Shown here: positions 14,752 to 63,894 of the stretch, one piece after another
Position numbering within the stretch: the stretch's first letter is position 1
Layout of the letters: each line of letters begins with the position of its first letter
NCBI GenBank assembly: GCA_013416795.1
Contig: RQSC01000015.1
Location: 719,369 to 783,368, forward strand
Length of the DNA: 64,000 nt
Source of the DNA: Prasinococcaceae sp. CCMP 1430
Lineage: Eukaryota; Plantae; Prasinodermophyta
Reading direction: 5' to 3'
Position numbers and translations under genes: made by a program
The notes under the pieces: model-generated
Told to the model about the DNA's origin: nothing
What the model saw: the letters and a program-made list of their open reading frames with translations, nothing else
Database searches by the model: none

Positions 14752-14807
14752 CCCTAAACCCTAAACCCTAAACCCTAAACCCTAAACCCTAAACCCTAAA
14801 CCCTAAA
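14752..14807. repeat. Interstitial telomeric array (CCCTAAA)8
   Basis: Eight perfect copies counted. Confidence 0.97.
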
Positions 14808-14808
14808 A

Positions 14809-14860
14809 GGGATTTGGGATTTGGGATTTGGGATTTGGGATTTGGGATTTGGGATTTGGG
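14809..14860. repeat. (GGGATTT)7 + GGG array abutting the telomeric array
   Basis: Seven perfect copies counted. Confidence 0.97.
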
Positions 14861-44700: not shown

Positions 44701-46629
44701 CGGGCGCAGCGTGCCCCCGCGCGGTGCGGCGGGGACCGCACCAGCGGCATTGGCCGCGCGGCATCCTCCCCGCCCGCGGCCGCCGACACGACGGGCGCTC
44801 GGACGTTCATCTCGGGGCCGGCGGAGACCAAGGGCGACGAGAGCGACGAGGAGGACTCGTCGCACGAGCGCGTGCCCGCCAAGCGGCCGGTCTCCAACAC
44901 GGCGGCGGCTGCGGCCGCGGCGCCGCTGCTTGAGGCCGGGGCCGCGTCACAACCGCTGCTGCAGGTGGCGCCCTCGGACCTGCAGCTCCCCCCTGGGGCC
45001 GTGTCGGGCGTCCGCGGCGGGGGCGTGATCGTTGGCGCGGCAACGGCGGACGGGGCGGGCCTCGACCCGTCGCTGAGCGGCATGGGCTACCTCAAGCGCA
45101 TCCTGACAAGCCGCGTGTATGAGGCGGCGGTCGAGACGCCCATGATAGTGATGGAGCAGCTCAGCGACCGCGTGGGCAACAAAGTCCTGCTCAAGCGCGA
45201 GGACCTGCAGCCCGTCAAGAGCTTCAAGCTGCGCGGCGCCTACAACCGCATGGCTGAGCTCACGGAGGAGGAGCTCGCGCGCGGCGTCATCTGCTCGTCG
45301 GCGGGCAACCACGCGCAGGGCGTTGCGTACAGCGCACAGCAGCTTGGGGCGGACGCCGTCATCGCCATGCCGGTCACCACTCCGCGCATCAAGGTGGATT
45401 CCGTCAAGCGCCTCGGCGGCACCGTCGCGCTCGTTGGCGACACGTACGACGCCACGCAGGCGTACGCGATGCAGCGCGCGAGGGACGAGGGGCGCATCTT
45501 CATTCCCCCGTTCGACGACCCGGCCGTCATCGCCGGCCAGGGAACCACGGGCATCGAGATCCTGCGCGACGTTGGTAAGCTCCTCGGCCGCGGCGAGGTA
45601 CCGCACGCGGTCTTCGTGCCGGTGGGTGGAGGTGGACTGATCGCGGGCATCGCGTCGTACATCAAGCGTCTCGCCCCAGAGGTGCGCATCATCGGTGTGG
45701 AGCCGGCAGGCGCCAACGCCATGGCGCAGAGCCTGCAGCGCGGCCGGCTGGTGGAGCTTTCGAAGGTGGACCCGTTTGCCGACGGCGTGGCGGTGCGCAA
45801 GGTGGGCGCAGAGTGCTTCCGGATCTGCCAGGAGCTGCTCGACGGCGTGGTCCTCGTGGGCAACAACGAGATCTCGGCGGCCATCAAGGACGTCTTCACC
45901 GAGACCCGCTCGATCCTCGAGCCCGCGGGCGCTCTCTCTCTGGCGGGCGCCAAGGCCTACCTGGAGTACCACGACATGGAGGGCGAGGCGGTCGTAGCCA
46001 TTAGCTCGGGCGCCAACATGAATTTCAACCGGCTGCGCCAGGTGAGCGAGATGGCCGACGTGGGCAACCGCCGCGAGGCCGTGCTCGGAACGGTCATCCC
46101 GGAGGAGCGCGGCGCCTTCAAGAAGTTCGTGTCGATGCTGGGCGCGCTCAACATCACCGAATTCAAGTACCGCCAGGGCGCCTCGCAAGACGCGCGCGTC
46201 TTCTATCGTGTCAATTACTCGGGGGCGGACGTCATTGAGGAGCTTTGCGACCGGATGCGCACGGAGAACATGCCCACGTACGACCTCACCGAGGACCAGA
46301 TCACCGAGATGCACTTGAGCCAGATGATTGGCTCGTCGGCCACGGTTGCTAATGAGCGGGTGTTCACCTTCAACTTTCCGGAGCGGCCGGGGGCTCTTGC
46401 GCTGTTCCTGGACACGTTCTCGCCCAAGTGGAACATCACGACCTTCCACTACCGCGCCTCGGGCGAGGCCGCCGGGCGTGTGATGGTGGGCTTCGAGGTG
46501 TGCGACGACACGCGTGAGGAGTTCTTCGCGGCCGTTGACAAGCTGGGCTTCGACTACGAGGAGACCACGGACAATCTGACCTTCAGAATGTTCCTGCAGG
46601 CGAGCGGCACGTGGGATAGCGTCGCTTGA
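44701..46629 (+). CDS. ilvA: Biosynthetic threonine dehydratase (IlvA/OMR1); true start codon not visible
   Basis: KREDLQPV.SFKLRGA (PLP Lys), SAGNHAQG, GGGGL, and two ACT-like regulatory repeats (PEERG, PERPG). Confidence 0.95.
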   Translation, partial: RAQRAPARCGGDRTSGIGRAASSPPAAADTTGARTFISGPAETKGDESDEEDSSHERVPAKRPVSNTAAAAAAAPLLEAGAASQPLLQVAPSDLQLPPGAVSGVRGGGVIVGAATADGAGLDPSLSGMGYLKRILTSRVYEAAVETPMIVMEQLSDRVGNKVLLKREDLQPVKSFKLRGAYNRMAELTEEELARGVICSSAGNHAQGVAYSAQQLGADAVIAMPVTTPRIKVDSVKRLGGTVALVGDTYDATQAYAMQRARDEGRIFIPPFDDPAVIAGQGTTGIEILRDVGKLLGRGEVPHAVFVPVGGGGLIAGIASYIKRLAPEVRIIGVEPAGANAMAQSLQRGRLVELSKVDPFADGVAVRKVGAECFRICQELLDGVVLVGNNEISAAIKDVFTETRSILEPAGALSLAGAKAYLEYHDMEGEAVVAISSGANMNFNRLRQVSEMADVGNRREAVLGTVIPEERGAFKKFVSMLGALNITEFKYRQGASQDARVFYRVNYSGADVIEELCDRMRTENMPTYDLTEDQITEMHLSQMIGSSATVANERVFTFNFPERPGALALFLDTFSPKWNITTFHYRASGEAAGRVMVGFEVCDDTREEFFAAVDKLGFDYEETTDNLTFRMFLQASGTWDSVA

Positions 46630-46756: not shown

Positions 46757-47822
46757 TCAGCGCCGCCTGCCACCACTTCGGCTCCCGCCCTGGAGCGCGT
46801 CTGCTAGCTTCTCCGCCGCCGATATTTGCTTGACACGCTTGCCGCCCTCGTACTCGCCCTTGAGGTACTTGGTTTGATTCTTCGCGATGAACTCCAGCAT
46901 CTCTGTGCAGTGGGTGGCCGCGCCCTTCACGAGCTCCTCTGTCACATCCTCGCGCTCGACGGCACCCATGATCGCGGGTAGCTTGACAAACAGTCTCAGC
47001 AGGTGCTCGCCGCCGTAGACGTCACACGGAGAGGCGCCACCCTGTCCGCGAAGGCCGTCGTGGGCAGGGAAAGGGTCGCGCGACAAGCCCGCGGCAGATC
47101 GGTTCGGCGGGGGTGGGGTGGGGTGGGGTCGGGGGTCAAGGCAAGGGAACAGCGGTCGGAGAGACGAGCGTCAACGACCTGCGCTAAACGCTACGAGGGA
47201 TAATTCGCTAGCGCGCGCCCTCGAGGAACGCACCTTGGCGCAGTGTTGCGTGTACTGCTTGCGCTCTGGGTCGTACAGCAGCTGCTTTTCGCATGCCAGG
47301 TCGAACCAGTCGAGCACACCGTTGGCGACTGACGTCGCGTCGAGTAGGCGCTGCCCCGAGGTTGCGCGCTTAAGTTTCTGCAGGGCAGGTGCGGGTCCAT
47401 GCCCCAGCGCGCGCGGGCGGCAAGCAGTCAGCGTGAGCTCGCGGGACCAGGGCGCGCAGGCGATGAAGACCCGGTGCCGGCTGGGCACGCACATGCGCGA
47501 AGCGCACGCACCTCTGTGTAGTCCTCGACGAGCTGCCTGACAGTCGGCGCGCTCGGCACGACGTGCAAGCGCCCTTCGTGCGTGATGGCCCGCCAGTCGT
47601 CCACCAGCCATTGCTTGAGCGCCCCCGGCACGCTGAGCACGAGTTCGGGGCCCTTCGCGCCCTCCTCCTCGAGCTCGATGTCGTCCTTGCGCCGCCTGCC
47701 TGGGCGACCCGCCGGCTTGGCGCCTGCGCCGCCCTTCGCGCCGTCGGCCGCGGCGTCAGCCGACTTACGCTTGCCGCCTCCAAAAGTGAGGCGGACGGTC
47801 TGAGAGCCGAGGTTGAGCAGCT
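46757..47822 (-). CDS. MRG: MRG15/Eaf3-family protein (exons ~47512-47822, 47234-47377, 46757-47041; 5' unresolved)
   Basis: LKQWLVDDW..IT, P..PTV…EDY, QLLY..ER.QY, VYG.EHLLRLFVKLP. Confidence 0.88.
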
Positions 47823-48324
47823 CTCCCCCCCCCCCCCCCCCCCCCCCCCCCTCCCTCCTTCCCCAGCCCCAACCCACCCCAGCCCGCGCGTGCGCGCCCC
47901 TCGTAGGCCGTGTCGCCGCAGACGAGCCGCACGCGCACGCGGACGCGCGCGCCGCGCACGCGCTGTGGCCAGGATGAGGCGAGGGCTGAGGTGCTGGGGT
48001 CGCCAGCCGCTAAAGTCGGTCGCGTGCAACCGAAAATGAGGGAGGGCGCAGCACAGACGGGCAGGCGCGGGAAACGGCCCCACCACCCGCCCGCCCGCCG
48101 CGCGCACCCGCATCCCTTTCAATCCCCGTGCTCTAATTCGTTTCTGGATTCGGCGCCCATTGCGTCGCGCGCCCCGACGCGACGCGCGCGCCCCAACGCC
48201 TATCCGACGGCTGGGTCCCGCCGTTTGCGGCGCAGCGGGCCGACCGCGGGCCGATTCCCGCTGGCTGGCGCGCCCGCGGCCACGCGGCGCGCTTGCTCGC
48301 GGTCGAAACGGCCGATCGCGCGCC

Positions 48325-51300
48325 ATGGCGGCGGGTGCCGTGGCAGGCGCCAGCGGCTCGCTCGTCGGCCGGCGCGTGGAGTGCTTCTGGGAGGAACCCA
48401 AGGAATGGTTTGCAGGCGTCGTCGAGAGCTTCGATGGCCAGTCTTACACCGTGCGGTACGACGACGGCGAGCACGAATCTGGTATCGTTTTTGATGGCGA
48501 CCCAACACTGCGTTTCGTTGGCGACGGCGCACACGTGACCAAGGCCGGCGCCGACGCGGCTGACACGGATGACGAAATGGCCGTCGCCGGCGACTCAGAG
48601 GTGGAAACCTCCGCGGACGAGGGCGCACAAGCGCCGGCTGCAGGCGAGGACGCGATGGGAAAAGACGGCGAGGCGACCGCCGAGAAAGTACAGGCGGCGA
48701 ATACGGGCGGTGGGGATGCCATTGGCCGCGGCAACGATGCAGACACGCTGGGCGCCAGCGGCTCGCTCGTCGGCCGGCGCGTGGAGTGCTTTTGGGAGCA
48801 GTACGAGGAGTGGTTTGCAGGGGTCGTCGAAAGCTTCCAGGGTGGATCCTACACCGTCCGTTACGACGACGGTGAAAGGGAGAGCGGCATCGTCTTCGAT
48901 GGCGACCCGACCCTGCGCCTCATCGACGAGACCACCTCGCCATGCGGAGCCACAGTGGCGACAGCTGCAGGCGTTGAAGCCGCGGATTCGGGCGACGAGG
49001 CTCTCATTGCCCGCCACGCGAATGGAGAGACCGACGGCGCCGACGATCATGTGCGCGCTCCGCCTGCGTCGCAACCGCGCCAGCGGCAGCAGCAGCAGCA
49101 AAAGAAGCAGCAAAAGAAGCCGCTTGAGCCTGGGGAGAAGGGTGAGGAGGAGAGCGAGGTCATCGAGGTTGGCGACAGCGAGAGCGACGATGATGGCTTC
49201 TGTATGATACGATCGAGTAGGGATCCGACGGATGGGCCTGCCGACGTCGGCGACAAGGACACGCCATCGTCAAAGCGCCCGAGGCGCACGTGCACATCCC
49301 CGGAGGCCCGCCGCGCGCAGGCGGCCGCGCGCGAGGCGACGCAGGCACGCTCCACGCCCTCCCACAGTTCGAAGCGCGTGCTCGAAGCGAGTGCGCCGAC
49401 TACCACCGGCGGCCCCGCCGCAAAGAAGCAGAAGAAGCCACTCCGGAGCACAGGCGCTTCCTCGGGGGCCACAAAGAAGAGCTCGACGCCCCAGGCGGAC
49501 GAGAGTGCGGCGCATGCAGAGTGGCGAAAGACAGCCGAGCCACCCATGTGCGAATTCATCGAGAGCGACCTGCCGAGTGCGAGCGACACAGCATACATCA
49601 ACGATGCGTCGGCCTTCGTGTGGCCCCCGCACGCGCCGCGCGCCGATGACCCCCCTGAGGCGACGGCGCTGCGCCGATGCCTGACCGAGTACAACCGGTT
49701 GCGCCTGCAGCGGGTGCTCTCCGAGCGTGCGCGAGCCGAAGCGGCTGTCGGCAAAGGGGGGAAGAAGGTCTCTCAGAGGCCGGACACCAAGGCAATCGAG
49801 GACACCAAGAGGTCGGGGCTGTGCACGCGCATCAAGGATGAGGCCGACGCGCTCAAAAAAGGGTGGAGGGCGCTCGCATATGGCGCAGTGGTGGGGGCCG
49901 TGCACGGCGTCCGAGTCGGCCAGGTGTTCTGGTCGCGCGCAGAGCTCAGCGTCACGGGCATGCACTTCCCACCGGTGGCAGGCATAGACTGCGCCGAGGT
50001 ATGTACCGACGCTGGCGACTCGCTCAAGGTGGCGACCTCCATTGTCGTGGGTGGCAACTACGAGGACGATAAGGACGATGACGCCAAGGCTGGCGAGATT
50101 GTCTACACGGGCGCCGGGGGGTGTGATTTGCTTGGAAACAAGAAGCAGGTGGCCGACCAGACGCTGGACACGCCCGTGAATCGAGCTCTTGCAAACAACG
50201 TTCTCGCAAAGTCGCCCGTGCGCCTCGTCCGCAAGAACAAGCTGGCCGTGTCGTACACCGCGCAACGATTTGTCTACGATGGTTTGTGGGATGTGACGTC
50301 CCAGTGGGAGGAGAAGGGCCTGAGTGGCTATAAGGTGCTCAAGTACCGCCTGAAGCGCAGAAATGGCCAGCCCGCCATCGACAACGTGCGAACGCTCGCC
50401 GAGGAGAAGAAGCAGGCTGCCGACAAGCGCAAGGAGCGTGCGCGCGTGGCTGAAGTCGAGCGCACGGTGAAGGCCGAAATGCAGCAGGCGCTGAGGAAGG
50501 AGCGCGACGACGAGCGCAAGGCTTTGCGCTTGGAGAAGGTCGCCGCGCAGGAGCACGCCAAGGCCCAGCATGCGATTGAGCGGGCGCAGGCCAAGGAGGT
50601 GAGGGATGCGGCAAAGGAGGCGGAGCGGAAGGCCCGCGAAGCAGTCCGAGCAGCGCGCGTGCAGATGCGCGGCGAGAAGAAGACGTCGGCGGGCCTTCGG
50701 AAGCGCCCTTCGCCGCCGCCATCGCCTGAGAAGCCCCAGGAACCTCCGCTGCAGACGCTGATAGCAATGGAGTCACAAGATGCTGCGACATCACAGTCCG
50801 CTGCTACCATCGCGAGCTTCTGTGCCAAGTTCGGCGGCGTGCTGGGCTTGCCTTCGCGCGCGTCGAGTGCCCTCGTACTCATGCGTGTCCCAAAGCTCCG
50901 TGCAGAGTTGGCGCACGTGGCTGTGGCCAAGTGCTGCCCTTTGACTGCGTGGTGGGGCGAGGTCGACTTCTCCGAGAACATTGGCGCGAGGTGGGCAGAG
51001 GCGGCTGACGTTGCCTGGCCGGAGGTCATGCGCAGGCTGCTGCTGTGCCGCCCGCTGGCGGGAAGGCAGATGGATGCGGCATCTCAGGCCGCATGCGGCA
51101 TGGGCGACACGTACTGGTGCGCCCGGGCAGCGCGCGTGTCGAGGGTGGCCTCGCACCTCAGCGCCCAAAGCTGGCACGAGCTGGATGCGGGCGATCAGCT
51201 GGCTGCAATTGAGGCCATTGTTGACGAGCTGGTCGACACTGCTGAGGTGCGAGAGGCAATCCGCTCGCGGGCGGAGGAGCTGGCAGAGAAAGAGATTGCG

Positions 51301-52641
51301 TGGCGGAAAGCTGAGCGCGAGTCGCAGCGAATGATCAAGGAGGCGGCAGCTGCAGCGCGCGATGAGATGCTCGAAAAGCTCAGCGCGGAGGCCGACGACG
51401 ACGCAGAAGCTGAAGCCGCGGAAGCCGTCGCGCAAGCTGGTGCTCAGGGTGCGGACGCCGCCGACGCCCTCGCGCGCCAGCGTGCAGCCAAGGCTGTGTG
51501 CGCCGCCAAGGCAAGCAAGGCCGGCGAGATCCGCAAGCACGTGTCTGAGGCCATCGAAGCCATCAAGGCCGAAATGGCCGACGAGAACAAGGAGCGGCGG
51601 CAGGAGCAAGTGCGTGAGCGACAGCGGCTCATGGTGCGAGACGCGCCCATCGGCGTCGACCGCGAGGGCTCGCGCTACCGACTGATGGCGGTTCCGAAGC
51701 TCGCCGTGGCGATGGAGAGCGAGCACGGAGGGCGGCTGTCAATCGTCGGCAGCGTCGGCAGCGATGCTGTGCAGGCACGCGCGAAGGAGCTCGGCCCCGG
51801 TCTGGAGGATCGAGCGCTCTTTGCTGCGCTGCAGGTGATCGAGGAGGACACCGACGACGATGTCCAGGATGAGGATGGTGTCGCGAGCGCAGGCGATGCC
51901 GCGGCGCGTTCCGCGTTCGTTTTGCGGGTGGAATGCGAACGGGCAGGCCGTGCGCTGCGGGACGCGCTCGTCGTTGGCGAAGCCGCCGCCACACAGCTGC
52001 CGTCCGGTGGCGAGGCCTCTGCCGCGAAGGCGGCGCTGAAGAAGGCCAAAGTTGCCCTGAGTGCCGCGCTTAGGGATGCCCAGCTTGGCGCCCTCCGCGC
52101 AGCCGCGCTTAACGTCGAGAGCGCGCTGGTCGCCACCGCGGGTGGGCAGACGCCGGATGCCCAGCACATTGACGAGCACCTTGCGCGCGAGCTGGAAGAC
52201 CGCGAGATGCGCGCGCTACCCCCGACCAAGTCCGAGGAGGGCGCCGTTGCCCGCGCCAGCGGTACCGAGGCGGAGACACCACCAACGAGCATGCTCGACT
52301 CGCAGCTCCAGGACTCGGGCGACCAGACCAACGCGGAGGGCGACGCACACGAGCGGGCGCAGGCTGCCGCTGATGACGCCGCCGAGCGCCACCACCTGGG
52401 CCACGCTGACATCTTTGAGATGGCTGTCGTCGAGCCGGGCCACCTACCCAAGGCACCGACCAAAAGCGCGCTGCCGCTGTGGCGCGTTGCCGCTGAGCGC
52501 GCCGCATGGCGCTACGACGCGCTCCACGCGACCTCGCCGGCGTGCGTGGGTCTCGAGGCCGCGCGGCTGCTGAGCAGGGCGCGTGCGGTGTTCGTGGATG
52601 CGCCCACAGTCAGGCGCAAGCGCGGCACCGCGCGTGGCTAG
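48325..52641 (+). CDS. Tudor x2 - SUVH-type SRA/YDG - coiled coil - DDT - WHIM1/2/3 chromatin protein (1438 aa)
   Basis: Two LVGRRVECFW…WF.G.V..F….Y.VRYDDGE repeats. SRA G.V.GV.VG..F.SRAEL…G.H…AGID…SIV..G.YEDD…YTG.GG…PVR…YDGL. WPEVMRR, WHIM1 L..LVDT..VR..I, WHIM2 PIG.DR…RY. Confidence 0.85.
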   Translation: MAAGAVAGASGSLVGRRVECFWEEPKEWFAGVVESFDGQSYTVRYDDGEHESGIVFDGDPTLRFVGDGAHVTKAGADAADTDDEMAVAGDSEVETSADEGAQAPAAGEDAMGKDGEATAEKVQAANTGGGDAIGRGNDADTLGASGSLVGRRVECFWEQYEEWFAGVVESFQGGSYTVRYDDGERESGIVFDGDPTLRLIDETTSPCGATVATAAGVEAADSGDEALIARHANGETDGADDHVRAPPASQPRQRQQQQQKKQQKKPLEPGEKGEEESEVIEVGDSESDDDGFCMIRSSRDPTDGPADVGDKDTPSSKRPRRTCTSPEARRAQAAAREATQARSTPSHSSKRVLEASAPTTTGGPAAKKQKKPLRSTGASSGATKKSSTPQADESAAHAEWRKTAEPPMCEFIESDLPSASDTAYINDASAFVWPPHAPRADDPPEATALRRCLTEYNRLRLQRVLSERARAEAAVGKGGKKVSQRPDTKAIEDTKRSGLCTRIKDEADALKKGWRALAYGAVVGAVHGVRVGQVFWSRAELSVTGMHFPPVAGIDCAEVCTDAGDSLKVATSIVVGGNYEDDKDDDAKAGEIVYTGAGGCDLLGNKKQVADQTLDTPVNRALANNVLAKSPVRLVRKNKLAVSYTAQRFVYDGLWDVTSQWEEKGLSGYKVLKYRLKRRNGQPAIDNVRTLAEEKKQAADKRKERARVAEVERTVKAEMQQALRKERDDERKALRLEKVAAQEHAKAQHAIERAQAKEVRDAAKEAERKAREAVRAARVQMRGEKKTSAGLRKRPSPPPSPEKPQEPPLQTLIAMESQDAATSQSAATIASFCAKFGGVLGLPSRASSALVLMRVPKLRAELAHVAVAKCCPLTAWWGEVDFSENIGARWAEAADVAWPEVMRRLLLCRPLAGRQMDAASQAACGMGDTYWCARAARVSRVASHLSAQSWHELDAGDQLAAIEAIVDELVDTAEVREAIRSRAEELAEKEIAWRKAERESQRMIKEAAAAARDEMLEKLSAEADDDAEAEAAEAVAQAGAQGADAADALARQRAAKAVCAAKASKAGEIRKHVSEAIEAIKAEMADENKERRQEQVRERQRLMVRDAPIGVDREGSRYRLMAVPKLAVAMESEHGGRLSIVGSVGSDAVQARAKELGPGLEDRALFAALQVIEEDTDDDVQDEDGVASAGDAAARSAFVLRVECERAGRALRDALVVGEAAATQLPSGGEASAAKAALKKAKVALSAALRDAQLGALRAAALNVESALVATAGGQTPDAQHIDEHLARELEDREMRALPPTKSEEGAVARASGTEAETPPTSMLDSQLQDSGDQTNAEGDAHERAQAAADDAAERHHLGHADIFEMAVVEPGHLPKAPTKSALPLWRVAAERAAWRYDALHATSPACVGLEAARLLSRARAVFVDAPTVRRKRGTARG

Positions 52642-54471
52642 AGAGGACGAGAGGTGCTGCTGTCGCGCAGTTGTAGATCTACATGTTGTCCGTACCGACA
52701 GGGGTAGCGGGCTCTTTTGCCGTGTTGGGCATGGCTATATGTGTGGCGCGCGGGCCGCCCTGCCAGCGACCGCGACTGCGCACGAGCCGGGGTGGAGGCG
52801 CGGCGCCTATTACGCCCTGCTGGCCTTCTTCGGCGGCGGGTCGTCGCTGATGGTCGACACTGCTGAGGTGCGAGAGGCAATCCGCTCGCGGGCGGAGGAG
52901 CTGGCAGAGAAAGAGATTGCGTGGCGGAAAGCTGAGCGCGAGTCGCAGCGAATGATCAAGGAGGCGGCAGCTGCAGCGCGCGATGAGATGCTCGAAAAGC
53001 TCAGCGCGGAGGCCGACGACGACGCAGAAGCTGAAGCCGCGGAAGCCGTCGCGCAAGCTGGTGCTCAGGGTGCGGACGCCGCCGACGCCCTCGCGCGCCA
53101 GCGTGCAGCCAAGGCTGTGTGCGCCGCCAAGGCAAGCAAGGCCGGCGAGATCCGCAAGCACGTGTCTGAGGCCATCGAAGCCATCAAGGCCGAAATGGCC
53201 GACGAGAACAAGGAGCGGCGGCAGGAGCAAGTGCGTGAGCGACAGCGGCTCATGGTGCGAGACGCGCCCATCGGCGTCGACCGCGAGGGCTCGCGCTACC
53301 GACTGATGGCGGTTCCGAAGCTCGCCGTGGCGATGGAGAGCGAGCACGGAGGGCGGCTGTCAATCGTCGGCAGCGTCGGCAGCGATGCTGTGCAGGCACG
53401 CGCGAAGGAGCTCGGCCCCGGTCTGGAGGATCGAGCGCTCTTTGCTGCGCTGCAGGTGATCGAGGAGGACACCGACGACGATGTCCAGGATGAGGATGGT
53501 GTCGCGAGCGCAGGCGATGCCGCGGCGCGTTCCGCGTTCGTTTTGCGGGTGGAATGCGAACGGGCAGGCCGTGCGCTGCGGGACGCGCTCGTCGTTGGCG
53601 AAGCCGCCGCCACACAGCTGCCGTCCGGTGGCGAGGCCTCTGCCGCGAAGGCGGCGCTGAAGAAGGCCAAAGTTGCCCTGAGTGCCGCGCTTAGGGATGC
53701 CCAGCTTGGCGCCCTCCGCGCAGCCGCGCTTAACGTCGAGAGCGCGCTGGTCGCCACCGCGGGTGGGCAGACGCCGGATGCCCAGCACATTGACGAGCAC
53801 CTTGCGCGCGAGCTGGAAGACCGCGAGATGCGCGCGCTACCCCCGACCAAGTCCGAGGAGGGCGCCGTTGCCCGCGCCAGCGGTACCGAGGCGGAGACAC
53901 CACCAACGAGCATGCTCGACTCGCAGCTCCAGGACTCGGGCGACCAGACCAACGCGGAGGGCGACGCACACGAGCGGGCGCAGGCTGCCGCTGATGACGC
54001 CGCCGAGCGCCACCACCTGGGCCACGCTGACATCTTTGAGATGGCTGTCGTCGAGCCGGGCCACCTACCCAAGGCACCGACCAAAAGCGCGCTGCCGCTG
54101 TGGCGCGTTGCCGCTGAGCGCGCCGCATGGCGCTACGACGCGCTCCACGCGACCTCGCCGGCGTGCGTGGGTCTCGAGGCCGCGCGGCTGCTGAGCAGGG
54201 CGCGTGCGGTGTTCGTGGATGCGCCCACAGTCAGGCGCAAGCGCGGCACCGCGCGTGGCTAGAGAGGACGAGAGGTGCTGCTGTCGCGCAGTTGTAGATC
54301 TACATGTTGTCCGTACCGACAGGGGTAGCGGGCTCTTTTGCCGTGTTGGGCATGGCTATATGTGTGGCGCGCGGGCCGCCCTGCCAGCGACCGCGACTGC
54401 GCACGAGCCGGGGTGGAGGCGCGGCGCCTATTACGCCCTGCTGGCCTTCTTCGGCGGCGGGTCGTCGCTGA
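51230..54471. repeat. 1621-bp head-to-tail tandem duplication (51230-52850 and 52851-54471)
   Basis: Identical ORF translations offset by 1621; junction …gtcgctga|tggtcgacac…. Confidence 0.95.
52850..54262 (+). pseudogene. Duplicated 3' part of the SRA-DDT gene; open 470-aa frame from a junction-created ATG
   Basis: ATG at 52850-52852 spans the duplication junction. Confidence 0.6.
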
Positions 54472-55954
54472 GCTTCGCGATGAGCGCCCACTTGCTCTTG
54501 GGCAGCGTCGTCCTCAGGCGGCAGATCCTGCCGTTGCCCACGTCGTTGCCCTCCACGCCGCACACCTTGACCAGGTTCCTCCACTTGTCCTTGAGCTCCT
54601 GCGGCGTGCGCGTCTCAAGCATGTGCGGGTTGCCCTCCTTGATGGCCTTCCAACTGTTGGCGCCGTGGTTCTCCACTCCGTCGATGAGCGCGATCAGCTC
54701 GGCCTCCTCCATGCGCGGCTTGCGAGCGGACTTCGCGCCGTCGGCGGTGCTCTTGGGCTCCTTCTTCTCCTTCTTCTCCGCGGGCTTCTTCTCCTTGGCG
54801 TCGTCGTCGCCCTTCTTCTTCCTCTTGGACTGCTTCTCGTCCTTGCTCTTGATGTTCAGGCTGAGCGTCGGATCCGGCCCCATGCCGTACTGGTCCATCG
54901 GCTTGTCGTCCTCCTCGAGCTTGGTCGACTTAGCGCCCTTCCCCCACTTGAGCGTTTGCTGGCGCGGGTGGATCTTGCCCTTGGAGGCCTCCTGGATGCG
55001 CTTCTTGAGGGTCGCCACGGTGGCGTCCTTGCGGATCTTGATCTGGAACTTCTTGAGCGACTCATCCTCAATCTTGTCGCACTTGATGGTCACGGTGATG
55101 GCCTGGCGCTTGCCCGGGGTGGCGGCCGAGCCCTCTTTCTTGTCCTTCTTGTCCTTCTTCTCCTTGGGCGTGCGCGCCATGCGCACGGGCTTGTTGGCGA
55201 GGTGGGGCGGGAGCGGCGGCACGACCTCTGGGTCGTACTTGTAGGCGTGGCAGAGCTTCTTCTTGAGCCACTTGGCGTTGCCCGAGTTGGTCGTCATGTT
55301 GAAGATGTGCTGGAAGTGCTGGCGCAGCTCCTTGATGTTGCAGTGCAGCGGGTGCGGGAGCTCGTCGGGCGGGGACGGCACGTTCTCCGGGATGAAGATC
55401 TTGACCGGGCGGCCCTGCGGCTTCTTCGGGCCGTCCGAGTCCTTCTTGGGCTTGCGCGGCTTCTTCTCCTTCTTCTCGCCGTCCTTCTTGTCCTTCTTGG
55501 CCGCCGCCTTCTTCTCCTTGGGCTCCTTGGGCTTCTTCTCCTTCTTCTCCTTGGGGGGCTTGTCCGCCTTGGGCTTCTTCATCGGGCGCTTGGACGGGTC
55601 GCCTTTGACCGCGATGCCGGCAGCCTCGTACGCCTTCTTGAGCTTGTTGCGCATCCACTCGGCGTTCGACGAGGTGGGCGCCTTCTTGAACACGTGCTCG
55701 AAGTGCTTCTTCAGGTCGGGCATGCCGGCCTCGAGCAGCGGGACGAAGTCCATCGGCGGCTCCTCGATGGTCTCGGGGGCCTTGATCTTCTCGGGGCGAC
55801 CGCCCTTGGACACCGGGGTGTTGGGGTCCTTGATCTTCTTGGCCTTCTTCGGCTTGTCCTTCTTGACCTTCTTCTCCGGCTTGGCCGCGGTCGTCGCGGT
55901 CGACTTCTGCGGCGAGTCGACCGTCGCGGCGATCTTGGCCTTCTTCACCACCAT
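54431..55954 (-). CDS. TRFL-type telomere-repeat-binding protein (two helical repeats, ubiquitin-like domain, telobox Myb)
   Basis: Myb with LKDKWRNL. Ubl ATVATLKKRI…QQTL…LEEDDKPMDQYGM. Two HF.H.F….S.NA.W…KL repeats. Confidence 0.85.
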   Translation of the reverse strand: MVVKKAKIAATVDSPQKSTATTAAKPEKKVKKDKPKKAKKIKDPNTPVSKGGRPEKIKAPETIEEPPMDFVPLLEAGMPDLKKHFEHVFKKAPTSSNAEWMRNKLKKAYEAAGIAVKGDPSKRPMKKPKADKPPKEKKEKKPKEPKEKKAAAKKDKKDGEKKEKKPRKPKKDSDGPKKPQGRPVKIFIPENVPSPPDELPHPLHCNIKELRQHFQHIFNMTTNSGNAKWLKKKLCHAYKYDPEVVPPLPPHLANKPVRMARTPKEKKDKKDKKEGSAATPGKRQAITVTIKCDKIEDESLKKFQIKIRKDATVATLKKRIQEASKGKIHPRQQTLKWGKGAKSTKLEEDDKPMDQYGMGPDPTLSLNIKSKDEKQSKRKKKGDDDAKEKKPAEKKEKKEPKSTADGAKSARKPRMEEAELIALIDGVENHGANSWKAIKEGNPHMLETRTPQELKDKWRNLVKVCGVEGNDVGNGRICRLRTTLPKSKWALIAKLSDDPPPKKASRA

Positions 55955-56390
55955 GGCTGCTGGTGGGGTGCGGCTGGTAGGCTGCGAGCGGCGGCGGGGG
56001 CCGTCGGTGTCAGCGACGCTGCATGTGTTGCCGCGAGGAACGACTTTGAGGCGTGAAGGGGGCGTGGGAGGGGGGCGGCTGGCGCGCCCGCCCGCCGCGC
56101 GGCCCCGACGCGCGGTACGGCGGTCCGNNNNNNNNNNNNNNNNNNNNNCATGGTCCGCTCCTCGCCTCCCATACCCCTGCACCGCCCCCCCACCACGCAC
56201 CTCTTCGTCTGCGCGCGGAGTGCCACCCCCCGCGCCGCCCCGCAGCGCGGCAGCGCCGCGCGCCCCTTCCCCTCCTTCCCCCCCCTCCCCGCGTCGTTTC
56301 ATCAGCGCCGCGCCCGCCGTGGTCTGCGCGCGCGCGCGGACCCTCGGAGGGAGTGATGGGCGAACGCATGCGCGCGGGGTTGGGGTGCGC

Positions 56391-56422
56391 CTAGGGTTTC
56401 GCGCCGCGCGCGCCAACCCTAG
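56391..56422. promoter_or_regulatory. Inverted pair of telo-boxes (CTAGGGTT-N16-AACCCTAG) upstream of the TRFL gene
   Basis: Direct reading; function inferred. Confidence 0.45.
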
Positions 56423-57023
56423 CGAGCGAGGGGGGCGGGCGGGGGCGAGCGGGGGAGCGAGCCGGCATCCGAACGCGCGCTTGCTTGCTTTTTGTTGGCT
56501 TTTTGGCTGGCGCCGCCCACCCCGCGCGCGCGCGTTTGCGTTTGGTTTTGGGGGTGGAAAGGATTCGAAGCGGCGGTGCGTTTTGACCTCCCTTTTTGGT
56601 GTGTCGGTCGGTCGGACAGGCGGCGGGCGGGGCGCGCGTGTTTGGGCCGACCGACCGACGCTTTTGGGGTCGGGTCGGGCCGCGCGCGAGCGTACGTACG
56701 CCCGCAGCACACCAACACCAACAGGCAAACACAAACACAAAAACGCCAACGAAACTTCAGCACTGCGACGCGAGGCGGAGGGGCGCGCCCGCCCGCGCCC
56801 CACCGGCCGGGGTTGGGGTGTTGACGCCGCGCTCCATTCCGCATGCGTTTTGACCTCGCGTCTCTCGCCGGCGTGCTCGTCTCGCCTCGCCTCGCGCGCG
56901 CGCTTCTGTCCAGCTCGCTGGCTGGGTGTGCGCGTGGGTGGGTGGGCCGTCTGCCTGTCTGCGGCGGAAGAAATTCAAACGAAACGCGGCCCGGCCGGGG
57001 GGCGGCCGGGCGAGAGCCGGACC

Positions 57024-57940: not shown

Positions 57941-60900
57941 CTACCGCGCCTCGAAGTCGGCGTCGCTGTCGCCGTCGCTCTCGGAGGACGTGTCCCCGCC
58001 CATGGCCTCGTCGTACTCATCGTCGTCTGAGTCGTCATCGGCGGGCGGCGGCGGCGCGCGCGCGGACACGCGCCGCCGCGCGGTGTGGTGGGCGCGGAGC
58101 GCGCCGCGCGTGGCACGGCCGGCGCGTCCGCCGCCGAGGCGTTCGCCGGGTGCGCCGCACCGCCTGCGGCCTGTTCCGGCCCGGACGACGGCCCGAGCGC
58201 AGCCATGTCGACGCTGACCGTGTCAATGACGCCCTCGACCTCGGGCGCGTCACACCCGACCGCCGCCATGGCGGGCACAGGAGACATGCTGCAATACCAG
58301 GGCTTGTCGCTGTCGATGACCGTGCCCGCCGGAAGCATGCGCCAGCGGTCGCACTTGTCGCAGCACGCGTGGACGTCCACGGGAGGCGCAGCGGCCGCTG
58401 CCGATGCGGCGGCGGCAGCATCGCCGCGCGGGTCGGCCTTGGCCACCTTCGGCGGGCGGCCGCGCCCCGCAGCGGGAGCGCCACCCGCGGCGGTGGCGAC
58501 CTTGGCACTGCCCTTCGGGCGCCCGCGCTTCTTGCCCGCGGGCGGCAGCGGCGGCTTTCCAGCGCTGGCGCCGACGTCCGTCGCACCGCGCTGGCCCAAG
58601 AACTTGCCGCGCGAGCGCCTCTTGCCTGCTCTGGAGTTCTTGATCACTGCGAGGCTAGCCTCCAGCTCGGCGTCGTCCAGCAGAAGCCCCACCACCTCCT
58701 CTGCCTCGAGGTTGTCCGCCGCGCCCATGGCACCGCCCTCCTGCATGACGAGCTTCTGCACGGTCTTCTTCTGCTCGGCGCGTCGCAAGATCTTCTCCTC
58801 GACGGTGTTGCCGCAGATGAGGCGGTAGACGGTGACCTCCCGGGTCTGGCCGAGGCGGTGCGCGCGGTCCATCGCTGCGGTCGCGCGCGGTGTCGCAGTC
58901 AGCAACGCGCCCGCACCCAACGCACACATGGAGCCACCGCCCCGCACGACAAGCGAAAGCACCGAGCGCGAGAGCGCGCGCCTCACCTTGAAGATCCATC
59001 GTGGGGTTCCAGTCAGACTCGTAGAAGATGACGGTGTCCGCGGCCGTCAGATTAATGCCCAGGCCGCCGGCGCGCGTGCTCAGGATGAAGCAAAACACCT
59101 CGTTCGAGCGCTGAAACCTCGCCACCATCTCGCGGCGCTCGCTCACTGAGTTGGAGCCGTCCAGGCGCATGTAGGTGTACCCGCGAAAAGTCATGTAGTC
59201 CTCGAGGATGTCGATCATTTTGGTCATCTGGGCAAAGATGAGCACGCGGTGGCCCTCCTCCGAGAAAAAGAGCCTGCGCATCAGCACGTCGAGCGCCTGG
59301 AGCTTCGCGCTCTCAGCCAGCAGCGCCGCCGCGTTCAGCAGCTTCACTGGCATCGAGGGGCCCCGCACGCGCGACCACAGCGAGCTCGCGAGGCCCGCCG
59401 AGTCACCGCAGCCTGCTGGCTCAATTCCAAGCGCGCCGCCGGCATCGATGGCACTCGCGAGCCTCGCAGGCAGCTGCGGCGGCGGGGGTGAGGGGGTGCC
59501 CGCGGCCGCGGCTCGGGCGCCCCACCCCGCCAGCGCGCGCAGCGTCCACGGGTGGTGCGAGCGCGCAGCCGTGGCATGCGCGAAAGAGCGGTCCGAACAC
59601 ACGAGCGCGGGCGGGGGGGCGGCGGCCCTCGGAATGAGGTCAAAGGTGCGTCGAACAGTGCCGGCCATCGCGTGGAGCCGGTCCTCGCGACTCATGACCA
59701 GCGGAGGCAGGAAGGTGCCGTCGGGGCCCTCAGCGCCCGCCTCCAACAACAGTGGCACCCGCTCTTCGGGCGCCGGAGCGGCCAACGAGAGCGAGAGCGA
59801 GCGCAACAGGCTGCCGCCATGCCCGACGTCGCAGTCGAGGAGCCGCGCGGCGCACGCTGTGGCCCTCTGCGGGCGCTGCACGGCGGCGGCGTACATCCAG
59901 CGCGTCACGGCATCGCAGCCGGTGGCGAGCTGCGCGACCTCGCCAGGGGAGAGGCCCTCGCCAAGCGCTGCACTGAAAGCGCTGCCCACACCGCCCTGTC
60001 GCACGGTCGCGTGAATGTGCTCGGCGTCGAAGATGGTCAGCGCGACGCGCGACCGCGCACCGAGCAGAGAAAAGGCCGCCCTGTCGGTCTCTCCGCGACC
60101 CCAAGCGTTGTCCTCGAGCAGTTCCCTCCACAGCAGCTTGGGCACCGACTGGCTCACCAGCGGCCGACACCCGCCCGCGGCGACCGCGTCCATCTCGCCG
60201 AAGGGAGCCGGCGGGTACTCGGGCGGGCGCTCGCCGAAATGCAGCGCCGAAACCTCCTCGCAGCGCTCAAACAGCTCCGGGTGGTTGCAAACCTTCCGGA
60301 GCTGCATGACAACGTTCATGAGGTTGAGCGCCTTCTTTTCGTTGAAGCTGCCCCCGCCCTCGCCTTGGCCGAGGATCTCCTTGAGGCTGATCTTGTTGCG
60401 CACCTTGTTGTACATGAGCGACTGCTTGCTGGTGAGGTGGCATGGCACCATCACCTCGGTCTTCTTTGCCATCTCCGACACCACGTCGAGCTTGATGCGC
60501 CGCAACATGAACGGCGAGATGATCTGGTGGAGGCGGCGCAGCTGGTGCTCGTTGAGCTCCGCGGAACCCTGTGCAGCCCCCTCGATGCCTCCAGAGAACC
60601 ACTCCTGGAACTGCTCGTGAGAATCGAAGAGCGTGGGCATGATGAAGTGCAGGAGCGCCCAGAGCTCAGCCATATTATTCTGTATGGGCGTGCCGGTCAG
60701 CAGCAGACGGTTCCTGCACTTGAACGAGAGCAGCGTCTGCCAGCGCGCTGACGACGAGCTTTTGATGGCTTGCGCCTCATCCAGCACCATGTACTGCCAC
60801 TTGACGCGCTTGAAGGAAGGCTCGTCGCGCACCACCAGGTCGTAGCTCGTGATGACCACGTGAAAGTCCGAGTCGCGTTTGAACAGCTTCTTGTTGTCAA

Positions 60901-63391: not shown

Positions 63392-63894
63392 GTGCGCGGA
63401 GGCGGTGCGGTGCGGCGCGCGCGACGAAACGCGCGGATACCCTACGTCAAATCCACCCCAATCCCGAAGCATCGCGCGGGGCTCCCGGCCGTAACCGCAA
63501 CCCTCCGCCCGCCTCCCGCCGGGGCGCGGGCGCGCGCGGAGCGCGCGAAATCCAAAAGCGGGAAATCCGCGCGCCTTCGGGCCGCAATCAGAAACCGCGG
63601 AAGCGCCGGCCCGGTTCGCGGTTCCGCGGTTCGAAGCGTTGCTTCGCTTGGCGCCCCCCCCCTTTTTTGACCGGGTTTCGCGCGCGGCGCGCCGACGCCG
63701 CGCGGTCCGGCCCCGGGGGGCGCCACAGGCGCGCGACGGGTGCGGCCCCACCCACCGAGCGACCGACCGGCCGACCGACCCGAGACCGACCTCGACCTTC
63801 TCTCCACCCTTGCGGCGGCGCAGAGAGGGAGGGGGAAGGAAGGGGAGGGGGGATCTTGAGCCTCCCTCACGCGGGGCGCGGCCGGGGGCGAGCG

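What the first reader, a model, noticed from the sequence alone, without database searches (positions are those of the whole stretch)
48325..52641. SET-less SUVH-type SRA reader fused to Tudor pair and DDT-WHIM module: candidate link from DNA methylation to nucleosome spacing
Seen: one uninterrupted ORF with two Tudor repeats, the SUVH4/KYP-like pre-SRA helices (..EYNRLRL…SQRPDTKA), an SRA with YEDD, YTGxGG and YDG motifs, then DDT-like, WHIM1, WHIM2 and WHIM3-like segments. There is no pre-SET/SET, RING or PHD. Known: eukaryotic SRA domains flip 5mC and normally sit in SUVH (SET) or UHRF/VIM (RING) proteins. DDT-WHIM proteins (ACF1/BAZ, RLT, Ioc3) are ISWI partners that sense linker DNA, and some prasinophyte algae methylate nucleosome linkers via DNMT5. 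Inference: this may be an SRA-based analogue of MBD-DDT proteins that recruits ISWI to methylated DNA. I know of no described protein with this architecture.
Basis: partly seen in the sequence, partly recalled or inferred. Interest (0 to 1): 0.85.

Follow-up and report, generated by a model that had tools for sequence, protein, structure and literature searches.

The report
Methyl-DNA reader fused to ISWI-partner module
A GC-rich marine green alga encodes one 1438-residue protein that joins two histone-mark readers and a methylated-DNA reader to the module that normally docks ISWI nucleosome-spacing motors, a combination I did not find described, but whose function is still only inferred.

Summary
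The ORF 48325-52641 (+) is real, and Logan contigs of three sequencing runs tile it without differences. Two Tara Oceans scaffolds carry it at 98.8-99.6% nucleotide identity, and a second species has an ortholog (P0002).

- **Confirmed:** two Tudor repeats and a SUVH-type SRA (Pfam E 5e-38). The Tudors most resemble the RDM15 H3K4me1-reading Tudor (PDB 7DE9), and its cage residues are kept. There is no SET, RING or PHD.
- **DDT-WHIM claim, mostly upheld by indirect evidence:** Pfam finds nothing in the window's own C-terminal half.
  - An exhaustive profile search hits a Tetraselmis BAZ1A-like protein (E 7e-7).
  - hhalign gives 98.6% probability over 254 collinear columns.
  - By segment: WHIM1 98.4%, WSD 79%, DDT weak (E 0.016), WHIM3 weak (E 0.005).
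  - The ortholog passes Pfam's WSD cut-off (26.4 vs 25.4 bits).
  - Language-model features of the DDT-like stretch alone retrieve DDT clusters.
- **Not obtained:** two AlphaFold models were poor, so there is no fold evidence. No RNA data were found. ISWI binding is untested.
an exact 1621-bp tandem duplication covers the gene's 3' end. Read depth supports it, and both Tara scaffolds lack it.

Verdict: a new variant of the known "5mC reader + DDT-WHIM" adaptors (BAZ2A, plant DDR1-3). Earlier scan notes call the genome Prasinoderma.

The parts
48325..52641 (+). Complete CDS, 1438 aa, no internal stop
   Evidence: Logan contigs of runs X1, X2 and X4 tile it with 0 differences. A Tara scaffold (L001) carries the same 1438-aa ORF with 24 synonymous and 19 non-synonymous codon differences. 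The ortholog P0002 aligns end to end, apart from most of the first ~270 residues (Tudor 1 and much of the spacer), with in-frame indels.
48349..48510 (+). Tudor repeat 1 (residues ~9-62), RDM15/PTM-DIR17 type
   Evidence: Pfam PTM_DIR17_Tudor, Tudor_KDM3B and Tudor_5 hits at residues 12-51. PDB 7DE9, the RDM15 Tudor, matches at E 2.4e-5. Counting along that alignment, the RDM15 cage residues W616, Y623, Y641, D643, D645 and E647 (PMC8184781) correspond to W22, F29, Y45, D47, E49 and E51.
48754..48918 (+). Tudor repeat 2 (residues ~144-198)
   Evidence: Pfam Agenet at 153-186, E 4e-8 for the whole protein with 2 stretches. It is a direct DNA repeat of Tudor 1 (48346-48524 vs 48751-48929, 79%). 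The same cage residues are read.
48919..49641 (+). Low-complexity acidic/basic spacer with a poly-Q/K tract and K/R-rich patches (possible nuclear localisation signals)
   Evidence: Translation. It is poorly conserved against P0002, with long in-frame indels. The CAG tract at 49081-49112 also occurs in contigs from elsewhere in the genome. The nuclear-localisation reading is inference only.
49642..49869 (+). Pre-SRA helical region (residues ~440-515), SUVH-like
   Evidence: The SUVH6 6a5k alignment starts at query residue 481. The stretch is nearly invariant between the window protein and P0002. P0003 (Tudor-SRA-SET) carries a visibly similar motif.
49870..50382 (+). SRA (SAD/SRA) domain, residues 516-686
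   Evidence: Pfam PF02182 E 5.1e-38, 130.6 bits. PDB matches are SUVH4 1.5e-29, SUVH9 2e-24, SUVH6 2.4e-24 and SUVH5 5.2e-24, against UHRF1 ~3e-15. The YEDD, YTGxGG and YDG motifs are aligned.
50392..50739 (+). K/E/R/A-rich predicted helix between SRA and DDT (residues ~690-805)
   Evidence: Translation. It gives only weak coiled-coil-type PDB hits.
50779..50964 (+). DDT-like segment (residues ~819-880), weakly supported
   Evidence: The HMMER profile hit to the BAZ1A-like P0011 starts here (query 22 = P0011 717). hhalign on the segment alone gives E 0.016, 25 columns, correct register. ESM-Atlas features of residues 813-887 alone have DDT (PF02791) clusters at ranks 1, 3 and 6, scores 0.82-0.87. 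Pfam itself gives no hit.
50986..51282 (+). WHIM1 (residues ~888-986)
   Evidence: hhalign WHIM1 vs WHIM1: 98.4%, E 9.5e-15, 97 columns, with all off-diagonal controls <=0.5%. BLASTP to P0011 gives 34% over 152 aa. The fragment P0013, found by the same profile, carries a weak Pfam WHIM1 match (17.7 bits, below the 19.1 cut-off).
51283..51609 (+). Long helical hairpin between WHIM1 and WSD (residues ~987-1095)
   Evidence: The AF2 model has helices at 168-233 and 235-296 of the C-terminal construct with pLDDT 65-87. The stretch does not drive the hhalign score (coiled coil vs coiled coil E 0.063).
51634..51747 (+). WSD / WHIM2 motif (residues ~1104-1141) with the GxD signature (G-V-D)
   Evidence: hhalign WSD vs WSD: 79%, E 1.6e-5. 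The aligned stretch of the ortholog P0002 hits Pfam PF15613 at E 8e-6, 26.4 bits, above the 25.4 cut-off. The window has RYR where the ortholog has RYW, and it fails Pfam.
52465..52593 (+). WHIM3-like C-terminal motif (residues ~1381-1423), weakly supported
   Evidence: Its best hhalign match is a W-R...E-R...W motif of P0011 lying after WSD and before the C-terminal PHD (E 0.005, 43 columns). It is conserved in P0002.
52851..54471 (+). Second, exact copy of 51230-52850 (tandem duplication of the gene's 3' end plus 209 nt)
   Evidence: One search shows 100% identity over 1621 nt. In Logan contigs the 1621-nt unitig has 1.5-2x the flanking depth and a 60-nt junction unitig (52821-52880) has about 1x depth, in X1, X2 and X4. 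The duplication is absent from Tara scaffolds L001 and L006.

Best explanation
This is a nuclear chromatin adaptor that evolved from, or alongside, a Tudor-SRA-SET (SUVH-type) protein and carries a DDT-WHIM module where the methyltransferase would be.

Shown by sequence:
- A SUVH-type SRA with the 5mC-pocket motifs intact.
- Two Tudors of the RDM15 type with the aromatic and acidic cage residues kept.
- A C-terminal module collinear with the DDT-WHIM1-coiled coil-WSD-WHIM3 region of BAZ1A/ACF1-like proteins.

Inferred:
- The SRA flips out and binds 5-methylcytosine.
- The Tudors bind a low-methylation-state lysine, possibly H3K4me1.
- The DDT-WHIM module docks an ISWI ATPase (HAND-SANT-SLIDE) and linker DNA, so that nucleosome sliding and spacing are directed to methylated chromatin.
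For: SRA:
- Pfam E 5.1e-38.
- SUVH4/9/6/5 are the best solved relatives, at 1.5e-29 to 5e-24, with YEDD, YTGxGG and YDG aligned.

Tudor:
- PDB 7DE9 at E 2.4e-5.
- The cage residues W, Y, Y, D, D and E of RDM15 (PMC8184781) align with W, F, Y, D, E and E in both repeats.
- The ortholog's Tudor is complete once an upstream exon is read.

DDT-WHIM:
- The profile of the C-terminal half, searched against 1.8 billion representatives, gave only 5 hits at E<=1e-3. The best outside the protein's own family (P0001 and the fragment P0010) is a WAC/HARE-HTH/PHD/WSD protein named BAZ1A in Tetraselmis, matched over its DDT-WHIM1 position (E 6.9e-7).
- hhalign A2 vs A3 gives 98.6%, E 1.2e-15, 254 collinear columns.
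- In the segment matrix only the like-with-like pairs score.
- The ortholog passes Pfam WSD.
- ESM-Atlas look-alikes at ranks 2-14 are all DDT/WHIM1/WSD clusters. The DDT-like stretch alone gives DDT clusters.

Conservation:
- 24 synonymous vs 19 non-synonymous codon differences against a Tara scaffold, with none in DDT-WHIM1.
- The ortholog is 48% identical over the module.

Precedents:
- DDT-WHIM proteins bind ISWI SLIDE and linker DNA (PMC8536118).
- Plant DDR1-3 (zf-4CXXC_R1 + DDT + WHIM1); DDR1 and DDR3 are reported to bind the ISWI proteins CHR11 and CHR17 (PMC10538959).
- Paramecium ICOPs bind ISWI1 experimentally although only a distant WSD match is detectable (PMC11789628).
Against: - Pfam gives no DDT, WHIM1 or WSD hit on the window's own sequence.
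- DDT and WHIM3 are individually insignificant.
- The window's WSD has RYR in place of the family's RYW.
- The reference set A3 was itself found with the query profile, so it is partly circular. P0011's WAC and WSD hits are nevertheless independent Pfam calls.
- Both AlphaFold models are poor (pLDDT 47 and 52), and Foldseek finds nothing, so there is no fold evidence.
- No ISWI sequence of this organism was available and no RNA evidence was found.
- Some WHIM proteins work outside ISWI complexes. MBD9, for example, co-purifies with SWR1 (bioRxiv 10.1101/404152, from its abstract).
Confidence: 0.6

Rival explanations
1. The protein is a reader-scaffold that does not bind ISWI. The C-terminal module is a diverged DDT-WHIM relic used as a DNA-binding or dimerising helical scaffold, or it docks a different partner. 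The protein would then act like the SUVH proteins that work as adaptors rather than enzymes: SUVH2/9 recruit Pol V, and SUVH1/3 recruit DNAJ proteins.
For: - The window's sequence fails all three Pfam models.
- W is replaced by R in the RYW motif.
- The family is very narrow and fast-evolving outside the motifs.
- The role of the GxD signature in ISWI binding lacks experimental support (PMC11789628).
- SUVH-type SRA proteins acting as adaptors are known (PMC4737185, from its title and abstract, plus background knowledge).
Against: - All four motifs are kept in order and conserved between two species.
- There are zero differences in DDT-WHIM1 against the Tara scaffold.
- Even more diverged WSD proteins (ICOPs) do bind ISWI (PMC11789628).
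Confidence: 0.27
2. The gene model is wrong. The long ORF is really two genes or is spliced, so the SRA and DDT-WHIM parts are not in one protein. Long ORFs arise easily in 68% GC DNA.
For: - Many spurious overlapping ORFs lie on both strands here.
- Introns exist in this genome. The neighbouring MRG gene is split into at least 3 pieces, and the ortholog has an intron in its Tudor.
- No RNA contig covers the gene.
Against: - The same frame is open for 1438 codons in the window and in Tara scaffolds.
- The ortholog keeps one frame from Tudor to WHIM3, with all indels in multiples of three.
- The linker between SRA and DDT is itself conserved.
- The 1031-aa variants in the cluster stem from a 100-N scaffold gap, not a real break.
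Confidence: 0.06
3. The C-terminal half is not DDT-WHIM at all. It would be a generic coiled-coil or low-complexity tail whose similarity to BAZ1A-like proteins comes from composition.
For: - Rich in A, E, K and R.
- Confident AF2 parts are mostly long helices.
- Foldseek's top rows are DnaK and F-BAR domains.
- PDB profile search is empty.
Against: - Coiled-coil segments contribute nothing significant (E 0.063), while WHIM1 alone gives E 9.5e-15 and WSD E 1.6e-5. All 30 mismatched segment pairs score <=0.5%.
- The Pfam WSD hit in the ortholog is above the curated cut-off.
- Atlas look-alikes are DDT/WHIM/WSD families only.
Confidence: 0.05

Closest known systems
BAZ2A/TIP5 and BAZ2B (MBD/TAM-DDT-WHIM-PHD-bromodomain; NoRC with SNF2H)
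   Same: A methyl-DNA-reader-type domain sits upstream of a DDT-WHIM1-WSD module. In that family the module binds ISWI.
   Different: Tudors replace the PHD and bromodomain as histone readers. There is no AT-hook, PHD or bromodomain.
Plant DDR1-3 (zf-4CXXC_R1 + DDT + WHIM1), reported partners of ISWI CHR11/CHR17 (PMC10538959)
   Same: They belong to the green lineage and join a zf-4CXXC_R1 domain, of the kind found in CDCA7, to DDT-WHIM.
   Different: DDR proteins have no Tudor. The window protein also has WSD and a WHIM3-like motif.
BAZ1A/ACF1-like proteins of green algae (P0011 Tetraselmis, P0014 Prototheca: WAC-HARE-HTH-PHD-DDT-WHIM-PHD)
   Same: They are the closest detectable relatives of the C-terminal module. 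Motif order is the same, with a long coiled coil between WHIM1 and WSD.
   Different: The window protein has no WAC, HARE-HTH or PHD. Its N-terminal half is SUVH-like instead.
SUVH H3K9 methyltransferases (KYP/SUVH4, SUVH5/6; inactive SUVH2/9) and the algal Tudor-SRA-SET protein P0003
   Same: They are the best SRA matches and share the pre-SRA helices. P0003 shares the N-terminal PTM/DIR17-type Tudor and is 41% identical over the pre-SRA and SRA region.
   Different: The window protein has no pre-SET, SET or post-SET, so it cannot methylate histones. DDT-WHIM occupies that position.
UHRF1 / VIM-ORTH (UBL-TTD-PHD-SRA-RING)
   Same: Tudor-type modules lie upstream of an SRA in one polypeptide.
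   Different: There is no PHD, RING or UBL. The SRA is closer to SUVH than to UHRF1 (1e-29 vs 3e-15). The Tudors are single RDM15-type units separated by about 85 residues, not a packed tandem Tudor.
RDM15/PDS5C Tudor (PDB 7DE9), an H3K4me1 reader
   Same: It is the best solved relative of both Tudor repeats, and the cage and acidic residues align.
   Different: It sits in a different protein context (PDS5/cohesin-related). Y623 corresponds to F and D645 to E here. Binding specificity is untested.

Membership tests
SAD/SRA domain proteins (PF02182) | SRA domain above Pfam's gathering score, with the YEDD / YTGxGG / YDG pocket motifs | tested here: met
   130.6 bits against a cut-off of 30.7. 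The motifs are aligned to SUVH4.
SUVH (Su(var)3-9 homolog) histone methyltransferases | Pre-SET, SET and post-SET catalytic region C-terminal to the SRA | tested here: not met
   No SET or Pre-SET hit at E<=1 on the whole protein. The paralog-like P0003 does have SET at E 7.7e-16.
SUVH (Su(var)3-9 homolog) histone methyltransferases | SUVH-type SRA with N-terminal helical bundle | tested here: met
   The best PDB matches are SUVH4/9/6/5. The SUVH6 alignment covers residues 481-693.
UHRF1 / VIM-ORTH | RING E3 domain and PHD finger flanking the SRA | tested here: not met
   No RING or PHD hit.
DDT-WHIM ISWI accessory subunits (ACF1/BAZ, Ioc3, RLT, DDR) | DDT domain (PF02791) | tested here: inconclusive
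   No Pfam hit. hhalign on the segment gives E 0.016 in the right register. The segment is included in the HMMER hit to P0011. Atlas features of the stretch alone point to DDT clusters at scores 0.82-0.87, which is a lead only.
DDT-WHIM ISWI accessory subunits (ACF1/BAZ, Ioc3, RLT, DDR) | WHIM1 motif (PF15612) | tested here: met
   Met by profile-profile comparison only: 98.4%, E 9.5e-15. Pfam directly gives E 0.14 in the ortholog and nothing in the window.
DDT-WHIM ISWI accessory subunits (ACF1/BAZ, Ioc3, RLT, DDR) | WSD / WHIM2 motif with GxD (PF15613) | tested here: met
   The ortholog segment scores 26.4 bits against a cut-off of 25.4, E 8e-6. The window's aligned stretch gives hhalign 79%, E 1.6e-5, and G-V-D is present. 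The window's own sequence is below Pfam detection.
DDT-WHIM ISWI accessory subunits (ACF1/BAZ, Ioc3, RLT, DDR) | WHIM3 motif after WSD | tested here: inconclusive
   hhalign E 0.005, 43 columns, to the expected position in P0011.
DDT-WHIM ISWI accessory subunits (ACF1/BAZ, Ioc3, RLT, DDR) | Physical binding to the ISWI HAND-SANT-SLIDE domain | not testable with these tools
It needs a pull-down or co-IP.
DDT-WHIM ISWI accessory subunits (ACF1/BAZ, Ioc3, RLT, DDR) | Ioc3/ACF1-like helical fold | tested here: inconclusive
   AF2 mean pLDDT was 47 and 52. Foldseek against PDB gave no match at E<=0.001.
RDM15/PTM-DIR17-type Tudor | Tudor barrel with an aromatic cage plus an acidic pair | tested here: met
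   By sequence only. 7DE9 matches at E 2.4e-5. The Pfam Tudor-family hits are below their cut-offs but consistent, and Agenet is above its cut-off (34.1 vs 27). Cage residues were aligned against PMC8184781. Binding was not tested.

The most novel reading that the evidence does not exclude
An SRA-based dual reader of 5mC and H3K4me1-type marks brings ISWI to methylated chromatin in an early-branching green alga. DNA methylation would then directly set nucleosome spacing. This would be a third, independent invention of a '5mC reader + DDT-WHIM' remodeler-targeting subunit, made by swapping the SET domain of a SUVH-like protein for an ISWI-docking module.
Probability: 0.35. Interest if true: 0.8.

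Novelty: new variant of a known kind. Interest (0 to 1): 0.62.

Why it matters
If the module does dock ISWI, this protein would show that evolution has wired DNA-methylation readers to nucleosome-spacing motors at least three separate times, with three unrelated reader folds: MBD/TAM, the CDCA7-type zinc finger and SRA. It would also show that a SUVH-type reader cassette can be re-used with a different effector.

The protein is a compact, testable handle on how 5mC and nucleosome positions are coupled. Per earlier scan notes the organism is Prasinoderma. A paper reports about 25% mCG and a DNMT5 candidate in P. coloniale (PMC11884799).

The family is narrow: two species-level clusters in about 1.8 billion representative proteins. 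The impact would therefore be conceptual rather than broad.

Tried and rejected
- **Pfam on the window's C-terminal half.** Whole and in three segments, it gave no chromatin family at E<=10.
- **PDB sequence search with the C-terminal profile.** It returned only a spurious 12.7-bit hit.
- **Two metagenome-contig scans (A2, A1).** Neither found a relative.
- **Two AlphaFold2 runs.** With 3 and 7 sequences the mean pLDDT was 47 and 52. Only the long helices were confident.
- **Foldseek against PDB on the better model.** It gave no match at E<=0.001. The top rows were DnaK and F-BAR domains, which mean little for so poor a model. I ran no further search on it.
- **RNA evidence.**
  - No listed holder of the stretch is an RNA run.
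  - The one run guessed to be RNA (X24) has only 18-32-nt scraps on the gene.
  - X24 does carry a 1555-nt contig that ends at 52819-52850 and runs on into sequence outside the laid stretch, presumably the downstream gene.
  - This says nothing firm about expression.
- **Assembly artefact as the explanation of the 1621-bp duplication.** Rejected, because the unitig has 1.5-2x depth and a junction unitig has about 1x depth in three runs.
- **The 1031-aa cluster members as a real shorter isoform.** Rejected. In the one contig I inspected (L006), a 100-N scaffold gap in the CAG tract breaks the frame.
- **The ortholog's spliced Tudor.** I described exon 1 and exon 2 by coordinates only.

Full report
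**Observation**

The + strand carries an ORF from 48160 to 52641. Its first ATG is at 48325, giving 1438 codons. In 68% GC DNA long ORFs are cheap, and one search lists dozens of overlapping ones here. I therefore looked for independent support.

- Logan contigs of three sequencing runs tile 48263-52880 with no differing letters.
- A Tara Oceans scaffold (L001, 98.8% nucleotide identity) carries the same 1438-aa ORF. It differs at 24 synonymous and 19 non-synonymous codons. None of the differences falls in residues 806-985.
- Four more cluster members from other assemblies are also 1438 aa.
- The 1031-aa members are probably not an isoform. In the one contig inspected, a 100-N scaffold gap in the CAG tract breaks the frame.
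- A clear ortholog from another species (P0002, 53% identical overall) aligns from its Tudor to the C-terminus, apart from most of the window protein's first ~270 residues. All indels are in frame.

The coding region is real.

**N-terminal half**

Pfam finds SAD_SRA at residues 523-682 (E 5.1e-38). It also finds Agenet and Tudor-family hits on two repeats. The repeats are a 179-nt direct DNA repeat at 79% identity.

The best solved relatives of the SRA are SUVH4, SUVH9, SUVH6 and SUVH5 (1.5e-29 to 5e-24). UHRF1 follows at about 3e-15. The YEDD, YTGxGG and YDG motifs are aligned, and the SUVH6 alignment extends back to residue 481. No SET, Pre-SET, RING or PHD hit appears at E<=1. A related alga has a Tudor-SRA-SET protein (P0003) that is 41% identical over the pre-SRA and SRA region. 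This suggests that the window protein shares ancestry with a SUVH-type cassette.

The Tudor repeats match PDB 7DE9 (E 2.4e-5). That entry is the RDM15 Tudor bound to H3K4me1 (PMC8184781). Counting along the alignment, RDM15's cage residues (W616, Y623, Y641) and its acidic residues (D643, D645, E647) correspond to W, F, Y, D, E and E in both repeats.

The ortholog's gene call looked as if it lacked the first Tudor strands. The DNA shows why:

- An upstream exon in L002 starts at an ATG shortly before 4229 and ends near 4302, and encodes the missing strands.
- A GT...AG intron of about 427 nt follows.
- The second exon begins near 4730.

I describe this by coordinates only and did not join the exons.

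**C-terminal half**

This is the crux of the finding. Pfam gives no DDT, WHIM1 or WSD hit on the window's own sequence, either whole or by segment at E<=10. Indirect evidence is nevertheless consistent.

- **Exhaustive profile search.**
  - A profile of residues 806-1438 (A2: window, P0002, P0001) was searched against 1.84 billion representatives. It returned only five proteins at E<=1e-3.
  - Two of these, P0001 and the fragment P0010, belong to the protein's own family.
  - The best hit outside it is P0011 (E 6.9e-7), aligned over its residues 717-927.
  - P0011 has Pfam WAC, HARE-HTH, PHD and WSD, and UniRef names it BAZ1A of Tetraselmis.
  - The matched stretch lies exactly where DDT and WHIM1 sit in that architecture.
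  - Another hit, P0013, has only a weak, sub-threshold Pfam WHIM1 match.
- **Profile-profile comparison.** hhalign of A2 against an alignment of P0011, the Prototheca homolog P0014 and two fragments gives 98.6% probability, E 1.2e-15. The 254 collinear columns run from the DDT position through WHIM1 to the G-x-D-R...R-Y motif of WSD.
- **Composition control.** I cut both alignments into six segments and ran all 36 pairs.

| Segment pair | Probability | E-value |
|---|---|---|
| WHIM1 vs WHIM1 | 98.4% | 9.5e-15 |
| WSD vs WSD | 79% | 1.6e-5 |
| DDT vs DDT (right register) | 2.8% | 0.016 |
| Coiled coil vs coiled coil | 0.9% | 0.063 |
| All 30 mismatched pairs | <=0.5% | - |

- **Ortholog against Pfam.** The aligned stretch of P0002 hits Pfam WSD at 26.4 bits, above the curated 25.4 (E 8e-6). 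The window has RYR where the ortholog has RYW, which probably explains its failure.
- **C-terminal motif.** Its best hhalign match is a W-R...E-R...W motif of P0011 located after WSD and before the C-terminal PHD, as expected for WHIM3. The score is only E 0.005.
- **ESM-Atlas feature look-alikes.** For residues 806-1205, ranks 2-14 are all DDT/WHIM1/WSD clusters (scores 0.79-0.87). The 75-residue DDT-like stretch alone retrieves DDT clusters at ranks 1, 3 and 6. By the tool's own calibration these are leads only.

My reading: homology of the module to DDT-WHIM is about 90% likely overall. WHIM1 and WSD are well supported. DDT and WHIM3 are probable but not proven.

**What could not be shown**

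- Two AlphaFold2 runs gave mean pLDDT 47 and 52. Only the long helical hairpin between WHIM1 and WSD and a few later helices were confident.
- Foldseek found nothing meaningful, so there is no fold evidence either way.
- No RNA run holds the gene.
- No ISWI sequence from this organism was available, so no complex prediction was made.

**Mechanism**

Established knowledge supplies three pieces.

- SRA domains flip out 5mC.
- RDM15-type Tudors read H3K4me1 (PMC8184781).
- DDT-WHIM modules bind the ISWI SLIDE domain and linker DNA (summarised in PMC8536118).

The simplest model is an adaptor that reads methylated DNA and a histone mark and brings or regulates an ISWI remodeler there.

Several precedents make this plausible. 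BAZ2A/B join an MBD-like domain to DDT-WHIM. Plant DDR1-3 join a zf-4CXXC_R1 domain, of the kind found in CDCA7, to DDT-WHIM1, and DDR1 and DDR3 are reported to bind CHR11 and CHR17 (PMC10538959). Paramecium ICOPs bind ISWI1 although only a distant WSD match is detectable (PMC11789628). That last paper also warns that the proposed role of the GxD signature lacks experimental support.

I put ISWI docking at about 0.6. The main rival, at about 0.27, is a reader-scaffold that uses the diverged module for something else.

**Organism and context**

Earlier notes of this scan call the genome Prasinoderma (s1-399949, s1-405987). I could not verify this directly. It fits four observations:

- GC content of about 68%.
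- A plant-type CCCTAAA array at 14752-14934.
- Matches in marine metagenomes.
- About twenty small 2024 runs of one organism, which is compatible with a published mutation-accumulation study.

That study reports 14% 5mC, 25% mCG, five DNMT candidates and a DNMT5 candidate in P. coloniale (PMC11884799). A methylation system for the SRA to read therefore probably exists. Nothing I read reports whether methylation marks nucleosome linkers there.

The neighbouring genes include several chromatin genes, which may be coincidence. They were identified.

- A threonine dehydratase gene lies at 44872-46629 (+).
- A split MRG-domain gene lies upstream on the minus strand (46757-47877).
- A ubiquitin-like + Myb gene lies at 54431-56803 (-).
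- INO80 lies at 58655-63751 (-).

**The duplication**

Positions 51230-52850 equal 52851-54471 exactly. In the contig graphs of three runs the 1621-nt unitig has 1.5-2 times the depth of the flanking unique unitig. A 60-nt unitig spans the junction at about single-copy depth. This is what a real tandem duplication predicts.

Both Tara scaffolds have one copy, so the duplication is strain-specific and recent. The full gene ends normally in copy 1. The junction happens to create an ATG at 52850-52852, in frame with the remaining 470 codons (end of WHIM1 to the stop at 54262). Whether that fragment is expressed is unknown.

**Novelty**

Paper searches for SRA with DDT, WHIM or ISWI found no description of this architecture. 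Aravind and Iyer 2012, the key survey of WHIM architectures, is not held in the library, so I cannot exclude a mention there.

The idea of a 5mC reader on a DDT-WHIM protein is established, but the use of an SRA with RDM15-type Tudors appears new. I therefore class it as a new variant of a known kind, with interest 0.62.

Noticed in passing
window 51230-52850 and 52851-54471: An exact 1621-bp tandem duplication covers the last 1412 nt of the CDS plus 209 nt downstream. It includes the last 41 nt of the minus-strand ORF 54431-56803. In three runs the repeated unitig has 1.5-2x depth and a junction unitig has about 1x depth. Two Tara scaffolds of the same species lack the duplication. The junction creates an ATG (52850-52852) in frame with 470 codons of the copy.
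   Followed up: yes
L002 ~4229-4735: The ortholog's Tudor domain is split by a GT...AG intron of about 427 nt. The gene call P0002 therefore starts inside the domain. The window's two Tudor repeats have no such intron.
   Followed up: partly
window 46757-47877 (-): The upstream, divergently oriented neighbour is an MRG-domain gene (MRG15/Eaf3-like) split into at least three exons. The gap to the ATG at 48325 is short, so the two genes may share a promoter region.
   Followed up: partly
window 54431-56803 (-) and 58655-63751 (-): Downstream neighbours are a ubiquitin-like + Myb protein (a plant telomere-repeat-binding-like layout) and an INO80 ATPase (DBINO + SNF2). With the MRG gene, four chromatin genes lie within about 17 kb. 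This may be chance.
   Followed up: no
ESM Atlas cluster, rank 12: A Chlorophyta-dominated cluster combines DDT (48% of members) with DNMT1-RFD (22%). This is another possible link between DDT proteins and the DNA-methylation machinery in green algae.
   Followed up: no
P0003 (832 aa, metagenomic): A SUVH-type methyltransferase from an N-rich (probably AT-richer) alga has an N-terminal PTM/DIR17-type Tudor: Tudor-SRA-preSET-SET. It is the likely sister architecture of the window protein.
   Followed up: partly
window 49081-49112: The CAG/poly-Q tract in the spacer also occurs in contigs from elsewhere in the genome, so summed contig depth there is ~4-5x the flanks. It also caused the 100-N gap and frame break in Tara scaffold L006.
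   Followed up: partly
I used it only as a hint of a plant-type telomere repeat.
   Followed up: no
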